A stretch of DNA of 63,745 bases, the filler included, from Octopus bimaculoides (lineage: Eukaryota): assembly GCF_001194135.2 (NCBI RefSeq). It is 6 parts of 6 records of this genome, joined end to end, with 100 filler letters (N's around TTAATTAATTAA, not from the genome) between each part and the next. Parts side by side here need not be neighbours in the genome. Positions count along the whole stretch, not along the records: positions 40,745 to 55,615 come from NW_026422129.1; 5 more parts are not named here. One strand, written 5' to 3'. Position 1 is the first letter of the stretch, and each line of letters starts with the position of its first letter. Shown piece after piece: positions 40,745 to 55,615 of this stretch. The position numbers and the translations under genes are program-made. Under the pieces are notes generated by a model. The model was not told the DNA's origin and ran no database searches. It saw only the letters and a list, made by a program, of their open reading frames with translations.

Positions 40745-43700
40745 TACGTATTACGTAGGCAGGAATTAACGAAAGAACGTACGTACAAACGAACCAACTT
40801 AAGAACAAACGAACGTACGTACGTAATTACGATCGAACGAAAGTACGAACGAACGAACGTACCAACGAACGTAAGTACGTATGAACGACCGAACGAACGT
40901 ACGTACGAACGAACGAACGTAATTACGTAAGTACGAACGAGCGTACATATATACGAACGTACATATATACGAACATACATATATACGTAGGTACGTACGA
41001 ACGATTGAAGGAACGAACGTACGTACGCAGAAAGGAAATAACGAAATAACGTACGTGCGAACGAAGGAACTTACGTACGTATGAACGATAGAACGAACGT
41101 ATGTACGTATATACGAACGAATGAAAGAACGAACGTACATATATACGTACGTACGTAGGAACGACTGAACGAACGAACGTACGTACGCAGGTAAGAAATA
41201 ACGAAAGAACGTAAGTACGTACGAACGAAGGAACGTACGTACGTAGGCAAGAAATAACGAAAGAACGAAAGAACAAACATACGTACGAACGTACGTACGA
41301 ACGAACGTACGTAAGAACGAACGTACTTACGAAGGAACGTACGTACGTATTACGTAGGCAGGATTTAATGAAAGATTGTACGTACGTACGAACGAAGAAA
41401 CGAACGAACTTACGTACGTACGTAAGTGAGAACGAACGAACGTACGTACGTATTACGTAGGCAGGAAATGACGAAAGAACGTACATACAAACGAACCAAC
41501 ATACGAACGACCGAACGTACGTATGAACGAATTAAAGAACGTACGTACGTACAAACGAACTTACGTACGTACGTACGTATGAACGATCGAACGAACGTAC
41601 GTACGTACGTACGAAGGAATGAAAGAACGAACGTACGAACGTAAGTACATACGAACGTACATTTACACGTACGTACGTACGAACGATTGAACAAAAGAAC
41701 GTACGTACGCAGGTAAGAAATAACGATAGAACGTATGTACGTACGAACGAACGTACGTACGTACGTAGGGAAGAAATAACGAAAGAACGTACGAACGAGC
41801 ATACGTACGAACGTACGTACGTATTACGTAGGTAGGAATTAACGTACGTACGAACAAAGAAATGTACGAACGAACGAACGTACGTATGAATGAATTAACG
41901 AACGTACGTAGGTACGAACGAACTTACGTACGTACGTAAGTAAGCAAGAACGAACGTACGTACGTATTACGTAGGCCGGAAATGACGAAAGAACGTACGT
42001 ACGTACAAACGAACCAATGTACGAACAAACGAACGTACGTATGAACGATTTAACGAACGTACTTACGAACCAATGTACGTACGTATTACGTAGGCAGGAA
42101 TTAAAGAAAAATCGTACATGCGAACGAAGAAACGTGCGAACTGACGTACGTACGTAAGTAAGAACGAACAAACTACGTACGTATTACGTAGGCAGGAAAT
42201 AACGAATGTACGTACGTACAAACGAACCAGCGTACGAACGAACGAACGTACGTATGAACGAATTAACGAACGTACGTACGTAGGCAAGAAATAACGAAAG
42301 AACGAACGAACGAATATACGTACGAACCAATATACGTACGAACGTACGTACGAACGAACGTACTTACGAACTAACGTACATACGTATTACGTAGGCAGGA
42401 ATTAACGAAAGATCGTACGTACGTACGAACGAAGAGACGAACGAACGTACCTATGAACGATCGAACGAACGTACATTGGTATGTACGAACGAATGAAAGA
42501 ACGAACGTACGTACGTATTACGTAGGCAGGAAATAACGAAAGAACGGACGTACGTACGAGCAAAGAATTGAACTAACATACGTACGTAAGTACGAACGAA
42601 CGAACGTACGTACGTACGTGCGTATTACGTAGGCAAGAAATAAAGAAAGAACGTACGTAATTACGATCTAACGAACGAACGTACGAACGAACGAACGTAC
42701 GAACGAACGAACGTACGTATGAACGATCGAACGAACGTACGTATGTACGTATATACGAAGGAATGAAAGATCGAACGTACGAATGTAAGTACAAACGAAC
42801 CTACATATATATTCGTACGTACGTACGAACGACTGAACGAACAAACGTTCGTACGCAGGTAAGAACTAATGAAAGAACGTAAGTACGTACGAACGAACGT
42901 ACGTACGTACGTCGGCAAGAATGAACGAAAGAACGAACGAACGAACAAACGTACGAACGTACGTACGAACGAACGTACGTACGAACGAACGTACTTACGA
43001 ACCAACGCACGAAGAAACGAACGAACTTACGTACGTTCGTAAGTCAGAACGAACGAACGTACGTACGTATTACGTAGGCAGGAAATAACGAAAGAACGTA
43101 CGTACAAACGAACCAACGTACGATCGAATTAACGTACGTATGAACGAATTACCAAACGTACGTACGTATGAACGAACTTACGTACGTACGTACGTATGAA
43201 CGGCCGAACGAACGTACGTACGTACGAACGAATGAAAGAACGAATGTATGTACGTATTACGTAGGCAGGAATTAACGAAAGATCGTACGTACGTACGAAC
43301 GACGAGACGATCGAACTTACGTACGTACGTAAGTAAGAACGAACGAACGTACGTACGTATTACGTATGCAGGAAATAATGAAAGAACGTACGTACAAACG
43401 AACCAACGTACGAACGAACGAACGTACGTACGTTCGTATGTAGGAAAGAATGAAAGAACGAACGTACGTACGTTTTACGTAGGCAGGAAATAACGAAAGA
43501 ACGTACGTACGTACGAACGAAGAATTGAAATAATGTACGTACGTAAGTACGAACGAACGAACGTACGTACGTATTACGTAGGCAGGAAATAACGAAAGAA
43601 CGTACGTAATTACGATCGAACGAACGTACGAACGAACGTACGAACGAACGAACGTACGTATGAACGATCGAACGAACGTACGTACGAACGAACGAACGTA

Positions 43701-52700: not shown

Positions 52701-55615
52701 AATTAACGAATATGCGTACGAACGAACTTACGTACGTACGTACGTATGGACGATCGAACGAACGTACGTTCGTATGTACGAACGAATGAAAAAACGAACG
52801 TACGTACGTATTTCGTAGGCAGGAAATAACGAAAGTACCTACGTACAAACGAACAAGCGTACGAACGAACGAACGTACGAATTAACGAACGTACGTACGT
52901 ATGAACGATCTTACGTACGTACGTACGTATGAACGATCGAACGAACGTACGTACGTACGAACGAATGAAAGAACGAATGTACGTACGTATTACGTAGGCA
53001 GGAATTAACGAAAGATCGTACGTACGTACGAACGAAGAGACGATCGAAATTACGTACGTACGTAAGTAAGAAAGAACGAACGTACGTACCTATTACGTAT
53101 GCAGGAAATAACGAAAGAACGTACGTACAAACGAACCAACGTACGAACGGACGAACATACGTATGAAAGACTTAACGAACATACGTACGAACGAACTTAC
53201 GTACGTACATACGTATGGACGATCGAATGAACGTACGTTCGTATGTACGAACAAATGAAAGAACGAACGTACGTACGTTTTACGTAGGCAGGAAATAACG
53301 AAAGAACGTACGTACGTACGAACGAAGAATTGAACTAATGTACNNNNNNNNNNNNNNNNNNNNNNNNNNNNNNNNNNNNNNNNNNNNNNNNNNNNNNNNN
53401 NNNNNNNNNNNNNNNNNNNNNNNNNNNNNNNNNNNNNNNNNNNNNNNNNNNNNNNNNNNNNNNNNNNNNNNNNNNNNNNNNNNNNNNNNNNNNNNNNNNN
53501 NNNNNNNNNNNNNNNNNNNNNNNNNNNNNNNNNNNNNNNNNNNNNNNNNNNNNNNNNNNNNNNNNNNNNNNNNNNNNNNNNNNNNNNNNNNNNNNNNNNN
53601 NNNNNNNNNNNNNNNNNNNNNNNNNNNNNNNNNNNNNNNNNNNNNNNNNNNNNNNNNNNNNNNNNNNNNNNNNNNNNNNNNNNNNNNNNNNNNNNNNNNN
53701 NNNNNNNNNNNNNNNNNNNNNNNNNNNNNNNNNNNNNNNNNNNNNNNNNNNNNNNNNNNNNNNNNNNNNNNNNNNNNNNNNNNNNNNNNNNNNNNNNNNN
53801 NNNNNNNNNNNNNNNNNNNNNNNNNNNNNNNNNNNNNNNNNNNNNNNNNNNNNNNNNNNNNNNNNNNNNNNNNNNNNNNNNNNNNNNNNNNNNNNNNNNN
53901 NNNNNNNNNNNNNNNNNNNNNNNNNNNNNNNNNNNNNNNNNNNNNNNNNNNNNNNNNNNNNNNNNNNNNNNNNNNNNNNNNNNNNNNNNNNNNNNNNNNN
54001 NNNNNNNNNNNNNNNNNNNNNNNNNNNNNNNNNNNNNNNNNNNNNNNNNNNNNNNNNNNNNNNNNNNNNNNNNNNNNNNNNNNNNNNNNNNNNNNNNNNN
54101 NNNNNNNNNNNNNNNNNNNNNNNNNNNNNNNNNNNNNNNNNNNNNNNNNNNNNNNNNNNNNNNNNNNNNNNNNNNNNNNNNNNNNNNNNNNNNNNNNNNN
54201 NNNNNNNNNNNNNNNNNNNNNNNNNNNNNNNNNNNNNNNNNNNNNNNNNNNNNNNNNNNNNNNNNNNNNNNNNNNNNNNNNNNNNNNNNNNNNNNNAGTA
54301 CAAACGAACGTACATATATACGTACGTACAAACGAACGACTGAACGAACGAACGTGCGTTCGCAGGTAAGAACTAACGAAAGAACGTAAGTACGTACGAA
54401 CGAACGTACGTACGTACGTCTGCAAGAATGAACGAAAGAACGAACGAACGAACAAACGTATTACATAGGCAGGAAATAACGAAATAACGTACGTGCGAAC
54501 GAAGGATCTTACTTACGTACGTATGAACGATCGAAGGAACGTACGTACGTATATACGAACGAATGACAGAACGAACGTACGAATGTAAGTACAAACGAAC
54601 GTACATATATACGTACGTACGTACGAACGACTACGAACGAACGTACGTACGCAGGTAAGAACGAACGAAAGAACGTAAGTACGTACGAACGAACGTACGT
54701 ACGTACGTCGGCAAGAATGAACGAAAGAACGAACGAACGAACAAACGTACGAACGTACGTACGAACGAACNNNNNNNNNNNNNNNNNNNNNNNNNNNNNN
54801 NNNNNNNNNNNNNNNNNNNNNNNNNNNNNNNNNNNNNNNNNNNNNNNNNNNNNNNNNNNNNNNNNNNNNNNNNNNNNNNNNNNNNNNNNNNNNNNNNNNN
54901 NNNNNNNNNNNNNNNNNNNNNNNNNNNNNNNNNNNNNNNNNNNNNNNNNNNNNNNNNNNNNNNNNNNNNNNNNNNNNNNNNNNNNNNNNNNNNNNNNNNN
55001 NNNNNNNNNNNNNNNNNNNNNNNNNNNNNNNNNAGGTAAGAACAAACGAAAGAACGTACGTACGTACGAACGAATATACGTACGTACGTCGGCAAGAATG
55101 AACGAAAGAACGAACGAACGAACAAACGTACGAACGTACGTACGAACGAACGTACTTACGAACCAACGTACGTATTACGTAGGCAGAAATTAAAGAAAGA
55201 TCGTACGTACAAACGAAGAAACGCATGAACTTATGTACGTACGTAAGTAAAAACGAACGAACGTACGTACGTATTATGTAGGCAGGAAATAACGAAAGAA
55301 CGTACGTATAAACGAAACAGCGTACGAACGAACGAACGTACGTATGAACGAATTAACGAACGTACCTACGTACGAACGAACTTACGTACGTACGTACATA
55401 TGAACGATCGAACGAACGTACGTACGTAAGTACGAACTAACGTACGTACGTATTACGTAGGCAGGAAATAACGCAAGAACGTACGAATAAACGAAACAGC
55501 GTACGAACCAACGAACGTACGTATGAACGAATTAACGAACGTACCTACGAACGAACGAACTTACTACGTACGTACAAACGAAACAACGTACGAACGAATC
55601 AACATACGTATGAAC
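40745..55615. repeat. Large CpG-rich satellite built from ACGT/ACGA tetramers, with anchor motifs and higher-order repeat
   Basis: About 15 kb including N gaps. The anchor tattacgtaggcaggaa(a/t)taacgaaaga recurs every ~70-200 bp. The landmark TTACGTAA is at 40923, 43702, 48069, 49738, 50944 and 52100. Confidence 0.97.

What the first reader, a model, noticed from the sequence alone, without database searches (positions are those of the whole stretch)
40745..55615. 15-kb tetramer-coded satellite with anchor-defined monomers and a 1.2-1.7 kb higher-order repeat
This is not a simple (ACGT)n run. Seen in sequence: 4-nt words (acgt, acga, atga, acaa, actt, acat) are strung between recurring anchors that are variants of one motif (gtaggcaggaaataacgaaaga, gtaggcaggaattaacgaaagatc, gcaggaaggaaatgacgaaat, gcaggtaagaactaacgaaaga, gtcggcaagaatgaacgaaaga). 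The anchor types recur in a largely fixed order. A once-per-cycle landmark (TTACGTAA...gggcgtacatatatac) sits at 48069, 49738, 50944 and 52100, giving spacings of 1669, 1206 and 1156 bp. Inference: a three-tier array (4 bp, ~100-bp monomer, kb-scale HOR) analogous to centromeric HOR satellites, so a candidate centromeric or heterochromatic element. I do not know whether it has been described. Both ends abut placeholder gaps, so true size and placement are unknown.
Basis: partly seen in the sequence, partly recalled or inferred. Interest (0 to 1): 0.75.

Follow-up and report, generated by a model that had tools for sequence, protein, structure and literature searches.

The report
Tetramer-built satellite DNA with irregular higher-order repeat
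This is a non-coding satellite DNA array that grew out of a four-letter repeat (ACGT/ACGA) by repeated rounds of copying. It is a clear example of a well-known kind of sequence; its chromosomal role is unknown and part of its kilobase layout is distorted by assembly errors.

Summary
The 12,823 read bases are a one-orientation tandem array. 85% of bases fit an (ACGW)n template, with only 79 register jumps, 60 of them at one homologous ATT site. The "anchors" are not foreign motifs: they are mutated tetramers in register (ACGT AGGC AGGA AATA ACGA AAGA). They define six monomer subfamilies, 83-93% identical within a type and 71-79% between types. The order of the types is strongly non-random (0 of 10,000 shuffles).

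The landmark sits at the four stated sites and also at 40923, 43702 and 44009. The kilobase tier is not a fixed 1.2-1.7 kb repeat. Cycles range from 1.16 to about 2.9 kb. The youngest duplication is a 2.36-kb pair of two alternating cycle types, 96% identical over aligned columns.

Most indels between copies (70%) are multiples of 4, so tetramer slippage looks ongoing.

Assembly caveats matter:
- The 820-N gap is flanked by a perfect 295-nt overlap.
- The 263-N gap has a 118-nt overlap at 96.6%.
- The only inverted block is a perfect copy of a contig end.

I found no coding potential, RNA family, CENP-B box, telomere motif or database relative. A centromeric role cannot be tested here. Verdict: a new member of a known kind, of modest interest.

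The parts
40745..45639 (+). Contig 1 of the array (4,895 nt). Anchor string: a L c d f b a d f a b a f b a f d e a b a a a L [inverted block] L c a d e a b a a e b a b a f.
40923..40990 (+). Landmark L copy 1. A CpG-decayed tetramer patch: ACGT AATT ACGT AAGT ACGA ACGA GCGT ACAT ATAT ACGA ACGT ACAT ATAT ACGA ACAT ACAT...
   Evidence: 1 mismatch in 27; sequence
43702..43770 (+). Landmark L copy 2
   Evidence: 0 mismatches
43805..43989 (-). The only inverted block (anchors d, e, b on the minus strand). It is 185/185 identical to the reverse complement of 47190-47374, which is the start of contig 3. Probably a chimeric join; otherwise a very recent inverted duplication.
   Evidence: AT skew flips here; minus-strand anchors
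44009..44075 (+). Landmark L copy 3 (degenerate variant)
   Evidence: 3 mismatches
45640..45651 (.). 12-N gap. The flanks are colinear with paralog 44603-44780 and their ends overlap by 7 nt on it, so the true gap is close to 0.
45652..46368 (+). Contig 2 (717 nt). Its last 295 nt duplicate the start of contig 3.
46074..46368 (+). Redundant contig end, 295/295 identical to 47189-47483. No other paralog pair of similar length exceeds about 96%.
46369..47188 (.). 820-N gap. Most likely spurious, an unmerged overlap of two contigs.
47189..53343 (+). Contig 3 (6,155 nt). Anchor string: d e b a f b a a L c d e b a a e b a b a a L c e b a a a a a L c d e b a b a a L c e b a a a b a a.
48069..49737 (+). 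Cycle of type I (L c d e b a a e b a b a a), 1,669 nt
49738..50943 (+). Cycle of type II (L c e b a a a a a), 1,206 nt
50944..52099 (+). Cycle of type I (L c d e b a b a a), 1,156 nt
52100..53343 (+). Cycle of type II (L c e b a a a b a a ...), cut off by the gap. Its landmark lacks 'gggcgtacatatatac'.
48906..50230 (+). Youngest large duplicate. It pairs with 51268-52575 (offset 2,362): 92% identity counting gaps, 96.3% over aligned columns. Six of the seven indels between the two copies are multiples of 4.
53344..54296 (.). 953-N gap. The flanks fit the canonical order, and the missing part should hold a', L and c. Paralogs imply 206-1622 nt.
54297..54770 (+). Contig 4 (474 nt): d e a d e
54771..55033 (.). 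263-N gap. The flanks dovetail over 118 nt at 96.6%. Probably an overlap, otherwise a tandem d-e module.
55034..55615 (+). Contig 5 (582 nt): (d) e b a a

Best explanation
The piece is a non-coding satellite DNA array built by nested amplification of a compound tetranucleotide repeat, (ACGT)n/(ACGA)n.

Step 1. A tetramer tract existed and accumulated point mutations. Some mutated words became markers. The 'anchor' is ACGT AGGC AGGA AATA ACGA AAGA. The 'landmark' is a patch in which CG became CA or TA (ACAT ATAT).

Step 2. Stretches of about 55-190 bp carrying these markers were copied head to tail, by unequal exchange or replication slippage. This produced six monomer subfamilies (a-f). One inherited 1-nt loss (ATT in place of a 4-mer) lies just 5' of the a and b anchors.

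Step 3. Blocks of 8-20 monomers were copied again as 1.2-2.9 kb cycles with a conserved head (L c [d] e b a) and tail (a a L). The interior holds a variable number of a, b and f modules. The latest event duplicated a 2.36-kb pair of cycles.

Step 4. Slippage in 4-nt steps still goes on inside the monomers.

What is shown: the structure, the register, the subfamilies, their order, and the indel spectrum. What is inferred: the mechanisms (slippage, unequal exchange) and the order of events. Nothing in the sequence points to a sequence-specific function. The most likely role is a heterochromatic tandem-repeat block, and whether it is centromeric is open.
For: Register: 85% of bases fit (ACGW)n. 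There are 79 jumps in 12.8 kb; 76 are -1 and 60 fall at the same ATT site. Markov-1 simulations give about 554 jumps per 6.2 kb against 41 observed.

Anchors: they need no register jump and fit the template at 72%.

Subfamilies: identity is 83-93% within a type and 71-79% between types. Random 90-mers from the array score 70.5%.

Order: 0 of 10,000 shuffles reach the observed conditional entropy.

Nested ages: the youngest multi-monomer copies are 96% identical over aligned columns, and other long paralogs 88-95%.

Indels: 100 of 142 between paralogs are multiples of 4.

Orientation: one orientation throughout, except for one suspect block.

Not coding: real ORFs reach at most 187 aa and are low-complexity. 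No Rfam hit reaches its gathering score and there is no tRNA.

Precedent for the seed: short compound (AACG)n(TACG)n microsatellites exist in unrelated metagenome contigs.

Known route: longer satellite units and higher-order repeats are known to arise from shorter repeats through cycles of duplication and divergence (PMC5615363).
Against: Array size, copy number and chromosomal position are unknown, because both ends are N.

The assembly is demonstrably unreliable at kilobase scale: four gaps, a perfect dovetail and a perfect inverted copy. The number and length of cycles may therefore be wrong.

The paralogous alignments are not independent events, so the indel and order statistics overstate the number of events.

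Perfect tetramer runs are only 2-4 units long. Ongoing slippage is inferred from length differences, not observed.
Confidence: 0.85

Rival explanations
1. The kilobase tier is largely an assembly product. A simpler satellite of about 100-190 bp monomers was threaded through an assembly graph, and the cycles, their lengths and the inversion reflect the path the assembler chose rather than the genome.
For: There are four gaps in 15 kb. A 295/295 dovetail sits at the 820-N gap and a 118-nt dovetail at 96.6% at the 263-N gap. The inverted block is 185/185 identical to a contig end. Another stretch is 108/109 identical to a copy about 1 kb away.
Against: The order L-c-(d)-e-b-a recurs at least five times within contigs. 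Those copies differ by 4-12% in private substitutions and 4n indels. Re-using the same reads cannot produce that. So multi-monomer units are real, even if their count and spacing are not.
Confidence: 0.25
2. It is a functional centromeric satellite: the array (or much longer arrays of the same family) carries CenH3 nucleosomes. The dense short dyad symmetries of the ACGT runs may favour non-B DNA.
For: It has a multi-tier tandem organisation with monomer spacings of 95-190 bp. 38% of bases lie in alternating purine-pyrimidine runs of 8 nt or more. A 300-nt sample folds as single-stranded DNA with z = -4.0 against dinucleotide shuffles. These are resemblances only.
Against: There is no CENP-B box. 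Nothing is known of position, copy number or chromatin. Between-copy identity of 88-96% is lower than in active homogenised higher-order repeats. Many non-centromeric satellites look the same.
Confidence: 0.15
3. It is a local tandem array embedded in something else, not a large satellite block. Candidates are the internal repeat region of a mobile element, subrepeats of an rDNA intergenic spacer, or a subtelomeric minisatellite.
For: Only about 12.5 kb of unique sequence is seen, with both ends unknown. No relative turned up in any searched collection, which a very abundant satellite of a commonly sampled organism might have given.
Against: The piece holds no rRNA, tRNA or other RNA family, no telomere repeats and no ORF with a protein relative. 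The collections searched are mostly prokaryotic or metagenomic, so finding nothing there says little.
Confidence: 0.15
4. It encodes a repetitive protein.
For: The ACGT and ACGA repeats have no stop codon in some frames, so ORFs of up to 187 aa appear, mostly on the minus strand.
Against: The ORFs are short, appear in all frames, and consist of (FVRS/YVRT)n low-complexity sequence. Monomer spacings are mostly not multiples of 3. The only database hits are unrelated microsatellite translations at 30-56% identity. No exact product is on record.
Confidence: 0.01

Closest known systems
Higher-order-repeat satellites such as primate alpha satellite
   Same: Diverged monomer subtypes follow one another in a set order. 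Multi-monomer blocks are the unit of later amplification, and same-position monomers are more alike than neighbours.
   Different: There is no sequence similarity. Cycle length is variable (1.16 to about 2.9 kb) rather than fixed. Copies are 88-96% identical, not 95-100%. Monomer lengths vary (55-190 bp). The whole array is still in a 4-nt register. A centromeric role is untested.
Complex satellites that arose from short repeats by cycles of duplication and divergence (examples listed in the review PMC5615363: sturgeon HindIII satDNA, wedge sole centromeric satDNA, several plant satellites; from my own knowledge, mouse major and guinea-pig satellites)
   Same: A short ancestral unit is still recognisable inside longer repeat units, and the periodicities are nested.
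   Different: The ancestral unit here is a palindromic, CpG-containing tetramer pair (ACGT/ACGA). It is unusually well preserved: 85% of bases fit, and the register holds for up to 599 nt. Even the 'marker' motifs are in register.
Compound or interrupted tetranucleotide microsatellites, (AACG)n(TACG)n
   Same: They use the same two words side by side. Such tracts of 40-70 nt occur in 15 unrelated metagenome contigs.
   Different: Those are short pure tracts with unique flanks and no anchors. In this piece, pure runs are only 2-4 units long and the tract extends over 12 kb or more with two higher repeat levels.

Membership tests
Satellite DNA (non-coding tandem repeat) | Head-to-tail repeat units in one orientation | tested here: met
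   TRF finds arrays with periods 4, 99, 103, 135, 155, 179 and 187. All anchors lie on the + strand except one suspect block.
Satellite DNA (non-coding tandem repeat) | No gene content | tested here: met
   There are only short low-complexity ORFs, no Rfam hit at its gathering score, and no tRNA. The protein search returns only microsatellite translations.
Satellite DNA (non-coding tandem repeat) | Long arrays, high copy number, heterochromatic location | not testable with these tools
   Both ends are N. No reads and no chromosome context are available.
Higher-order repeat (HOR) satellite | Distinct monomer subtypes in a recurring order | tested here: met
   Identity is 83-93% within a type and 71-79% between types. 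Order entropy is 1.26 against 2.12 bits, with 0 of 10,000 shuffles as low.
Higher-order repeat (HOR) satellite | HOR copies much more alike than the monomers inside one HOR | tested here: inconclusive
   Multi-monomer copies are 88-96% identical, against 71-79% between monomer types. The direction is right, but homogeneity is below the 95-100% typical of active HORs.
Higher-order repeat (HOR) satellite | Constant HOR unit length and monomer number | tested here: not met
   Landmark-to-landmark distances are 2779, about 2945 (after collapsing the dovetail), 1669, 1206 and 1156 nt. The number of interior modules varies.
Centromeric satellite | Association with CenH3/CENP-A and position at the primary constriction | not testable with these tools
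   This needs ChIP or CUT&Tag and FISH in the source organism, which is unidentified.
Centromeric satellite | CENP-B box (TTCGNNNNANNCGGG). This defines only some lineages. | tested here: not met
   0 matches on either strand.
Microsatellite (simple sequence repeat) | Uninterrupted tract of a 1-6 bp unit, usually under 1 kb | tested here: not met
   The longest perfect (ACGT)n or (ACGA)n run is 4 units. The tract spans 12 kb or more with higher-level periodicity, and only the register survives.
Telomeric or subtelomeric repeat | Presence of TTAGGG or TTAGG arrays | tested here: not met
   0 matches.

The most novel reading that the evidence does not exclude
The array is the (so far undescribed) centromeric satellite of its source organism. 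On this reading the 4-nt register and the very high density of palindromic ACGT/TACGTA sites (one CpG per 6.6 bp, CpG o/e 3.4) are kept by selection. The selected property could be non-B DNA formation, or binding of a factor that recognises ACGT cores or the conserved anchor. The alternative is that the register is only a relic of a microsatellite.
Probability: 0.1. Interest if true: 0.6.

Novelty: new member of a known kind. Interest (0 to 1): 0.3.

Why it matters
If the structure is real, this is an unusually legible example of how a complex satellite is built from a microsatellite. All three levels (4 bp, about 100-190 bp, kilobases) can still be read in one register, so the order of events can be reconstructed directly.

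It would matter more if three things held. The family would have to prove abundant and centromeric in its host. The host's centromeres would have to be uncharacterised. And the extreme CpG density would have to be shown to be unmethylated or protected.

Practically, the piece also flags scaffold errors: a spurious 820-N gap and a probable chimeric inversion. Anyone using this assembly region should know about them.

Tried and rejected
1. Exact search for the 24-nt anchor in the metagenome, prokaryotic-genome and viral collections: 0 hits each.

2. Search for a 23-nt filler pattern: 0 hits in genomes. It hit 15 metagenome contigs, all of them short compound (AACG)n(TACG)n microsatellites without anchors, so not relatives.

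3. Exact look-up of the two longest real ORF products: not on record.

4. Protein search with the 187-aa pseudo-ORF, meant to find the source organism. It returned only (FVRS)n-type translations at 30-56% identity, and none carries the anchor peptide.

5. Literature:
   - Anchor strings: 0 papers.
   - Tetramer strings: only unrelated oligonucleotides.
   - Cephalopod, satellite and satellitome searches, plus the Sepia officinalis genome paper: no described satellite to compare with.
   - One search failed on syntax.

6. Rfam at a permissive E-value: only miRNA-hairpin-like hits at 24-34 bits against gathering scores of 55-101. I rejected these as low-complexity hairpins.

7. Coding hypothesis: rejected.

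8. CENP-B box and telomere motifs: absent.

9. CpG-decay test between young paralogs. CpG transitions are only about 2.3 times as frequent per site as non-CpG transitions, and ts/tv is 0.74. That is suggestive of weak methylation-driven decay. It is too confounded by ACGT<->ACGA word swaps and possible assembly noise to use as evidence.

10. A test of whether anchors are more conserved than filler was not run. Anchors were found by similarity, so the test would be biased by ascertainment.

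
Full report
**What is there.** The piece 40745-55615 consists of five contigs of 4895, 717, 6155, 474 and 582 nt, 12,823 read bases in all. They are separated by N runs of 12, 820, 953 and 263. 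Composition is strongly strand-asymmetric: A 40%, T 17%, G 23%, C 20%. CpG is extreme, with 1,953 CpG and an observed/expected ratio of 3.4. Tandem Repeats Finder reports overlapping arrays with periods 4, 12-32, 71, 99, 103, 135, 155, 179 and 187.

**Tier 1, the tetramer register.** I ran a four-state phase parse against the template A-C-G-(A/T).
- It fits 85% of all bases: 92%, 70%, 82% and 95% at the four template positions.
- There are only 79 register jumps in 12.8 kb. Of these, 76 are a loss of one template position.
- Sixty of the 79 lie at one homologous site, the ATT immediately 5' of the GTAGGCAGG anchors.
- Register-preserving stretches have a median of 136 nt and a maximum of 599 nt.
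- Markov-1 simulations with the same dinucleotide transitions need about 554 jumps per 6,155 nt, against 41 observed. The register is therefore not a by-product of composition.
- In-register words are ACGT 30%, ACGA 25.5%, AAGA 5.5%, ATGA 4%, AGGA 3%, ACAA, ACAT and ACTT about 2% each.
- Autocorrelation is 0.68 at lag 4 and decays over about 70 nt. Longer peaks fall at lags congruent to 3 mod 4 (99, 155, 159, 187, about 2600-2700), as expected from the single-base loss per anchor.
- Perfect runs are short: (ACGT)n and (ACGA)n never exceed 4 units.

**Tier 2, anchors and monomers.** The anchors themselves lie in register and need no jump: ACGT AGGC AGGA AATA ACGA AAGA ACGT. They fit the template at 72%. 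So they are point-mutated tetramers, not inserted foreign motifs.

The landmark is also in register...ACGG GCGT ACAT ATAT ACGA ACGT ACAT ATAT ACGA ACAT ACAT ATTT.... It reads as an ACGT/ACGA patch in which CG has become CA or TA, with an internal 20-nt duplication (sequence).

I classified anchors into six types (a-f) plus the landmark L.
- 90-nt stretches starting at an anchor are 83-93% identical within a type.
- They are 71-79% identical between types.
- Random 90-mers of the array score 70.5%.

**Order of the types.** I dropped the redundant contig end and treated the gaps and the inversion as breaks. Over the 92 remaining transitions:
- Conditional entropy is 1.26 bits, against 2.12 +/- 0.06 in label shuffles. 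None of 10,000 shuffles is as low.
- b->a holds in 18/18 cases, L->c in 6/6, d->e or d->f in 9/9, and e->b in 8/11.
- Spacings are tight for some steps: d->e 54-55, L->c 101-102 (one copy 82), b->a mostly 98-103.
- Spacings are variable for a->a and a->b (64-225).

**Tier 3, kilobase cycles.** Landmarks lie at 40923, 43702, 44009, 48069, 49738, 50944 and 52100. The 52100 copy lacks the 'gggcgtacatatatac' part.

The cycles are not uniform. The anchor strings alternate between two types:
- Type I: L c d e b a ... b a a (48069 and 50944).
- Type II: L c e b a a a ... (49738 and 52100).

The longest paralogy is 48906-50230 against 51268-52575, at an offset of 2,362. It is 92% identical counting gaps and 96.3% over aligned columns. 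Other long paralogs are 82-95% identical. In contig 1 the landmark spacing is 2,779 and autocorrelation peaks near 2,600.

The top tier is therefore best described as an irregular, variable-length multi-monomer cycle of 1.16 to about 2.9 kb. Its most recent copying unit was a 2.36-kb pair of cycles. It is not a fixed 1.2-1.7 kb repeat.

**Ongoing processes.** Among 68 paralogous alignments of at least 250 nt and at least 88% identity, 100 of 142 indels are multiples of 4, and 85 of them are exactly 4 nt. The events are not independent, but the excess over the 25% expectation is very large. This fits continued tetramer slippage inside the monomers.

Between young paralogs the substitutions were 62 CpG transitions, 68 CpG transversions, 62 non-CpG transitions and 100 non-CpG transversions. 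Per site, CpG transitions are only about 2.3 times as frequent as non-CpG transitions. This hints at weak methylation-driven decay. It is confounded by ACGT<->ACGA word swaps and possible assembly noise.

**Gaps and assembly quality** (tested first, as asked).
1. 12-N gap. One paralog (44603-44780) spans both flanks, at 72/76 and 108/109 identity. The flank ends overlap by 7 nt on it. The sequence is continuous and the gap is about 0.
2. 820-N gap. The last 295 nt on the left (46074-46368) are 100% identical to the first 295 nt on the right (47189-47483). No other pair of similar length exceeds about 96%. This is an unmerged contig overlap, so the gap and 295 nt are spurious.
3. 953-N gap. The flanks fit the canonical order. 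Paralogs imply 206-1622 nt missing, which should include a', L and c.
4. 263-N gap. A 118-nt dovetail at 96.6%, with three paralogs implying -118. This is probably an overlap as well.
5. Inverted block. The only one, 43805-43989, is 185/185 identical to the reverse complement of 47190-47374, which is the very start of contig 3. It is at most 90% identical to every other d-e-b copy, and AT skew flips there. A chimeric join is the likeliest reading; a very recent inverted duplication cannot be excluded.

These defects do not undo the multi-monomer order. That order recurs at least five times in copies that differ by 4-12%. They do make the number, length and arrangement of the cycles uncertain.

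**What it is not.**
- It is not coding. ORFs not spanning N reach at most 187 aa, are (FVRS/YVRT)-type low complexity, and occur in several frames.
- No Rfam family reaches its gathering score: the best hits are 24-34 bits against thresholds of 55-101. There is no tRNA.
- There is no CENP-B box and no TTAGGG or TTAGG telomere repeat.

**Relatives and source.**
- The 24-nt anchor has no exact match in the metagenome, prokaryotic-genome or viral collections.
- A 23-nt filler pattern finds 15 metagenome contigs. All hold short (40-70 nt) compound microsatellites (AACG)n(TACG)n with unique flanks and no anchors. They show that the proposed seed sequence arises readily elsewhere, but they are not relatives.
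- ORF-product look-ups and a protein search found only unrelated microsatellite translations.
- The anchor strings occur in no paper. Searches for cephalopod satellites, and the Sepia officinalis genome paper, gave nothing to compare with.

**Mechanism.** The best-supported account is nested amplification.
1. A compound tetranucleotide tract accumulated point mutations.
2. Marked stretches of about 55-190 bp were copied in tandem into diverging monomer subfamilies. These inherited one shared 1-nt deletion.
3. Blocks of monomers were then copied as kilobase cycles.
4. 4-nt slippage continues.

This is the textbook route by which longer satellite units and higher-order repeats arise from shorter ones through cycles of duplication and divergence (review PMC5615363). 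The structure is shown here; the mechanisms are inferred.

**Physical properties.** 38% of bases lie in alternating purine-pyrimidine runs of 8 nt or more. A 300-nt sample folds as single-stranded DNA with z = -4.0 against dinucleotide shuffles. Non-B DNA potential is therefore high, but this follows from the palindromic ACGT word and is not evidence of function.

**Comparison and verdict.** The array works like a higher-order-repeat satellite, with subtypes in a set order and block-wise copying. It fails the criterion of constant unit length, and its homogeneity is below that of active higher-order repeats. Membership among centromeric satellites cannot be tested here. I file it as a new member of a known kind: a complex satellite derived from a simple repeat. 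It stands out for how completely the ancestral 4-nt register is preserved and for its CpG density. Interest is modest (0.3). It would rise if the family proves to be the abundant centromeric repeat of an organism whose centromeres are not yet characterised.

Noticed in passing
window 46074-46368 and 47189-47483: These are 295/295 identical and are exactly the two contig ends beside the 820-N gap. This is an unmerged overlap, so the scaffold is about 1.1 kb too long here.
   Followed up: yes
window 43805-43989: The only minus-strand block in the piece. It is a perfect reverse complement of the start of contig 3 (47190-47374). Both junctions fall in generic tetramer filler (cgca / gtacg). Probably a chimeric join.
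   Followed up: partly
window 45652-45760 vs 44672-44780: 108/109 identical, well above the usual 88-96% between paralogs. After 45760 the two copies diverge abruptly into an atypical, poorly tetrameric stretch (45780-45860, 'cgtccttccatatgaacgacc...gagcgaaggaaagagcgacc').
   Followed up: partly
window 48712-48758: A local 19-nt tandem duplication (AAATAACGTGGAAATGACT x 2.5). It breaks the 4-nt register and is one of the few jumps not at the ATT site.
   Followed up: no
window 50775-50850: A run of 12-, 20- and 24-nt subrepeats (ACGTACGAACGT...) replaces the usual monomer interior. Most of the stronger sub-threshold miRNA-hairpin Rfam hits fall here.
   Followed up: no
L001, L004, L006 (about 1480-1550) and 12 other metagenome loci: Short compound microsatellites (AACG)n(TACG)n of 40-70 nt in unrelated contigs. 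L001, L004 and L006 are near-identical copies of one locus. L009 holds a different AACG/AACC-type array.
   Followed up: partly
whole piece: CpG density is one per 6.6 bp (o/e 3.4). CpG transitions between young paralogs are only about 2.3-fold more frequent per site, and transversions outnumber transitions (ts/tv 0.74).
   Followed up: partly
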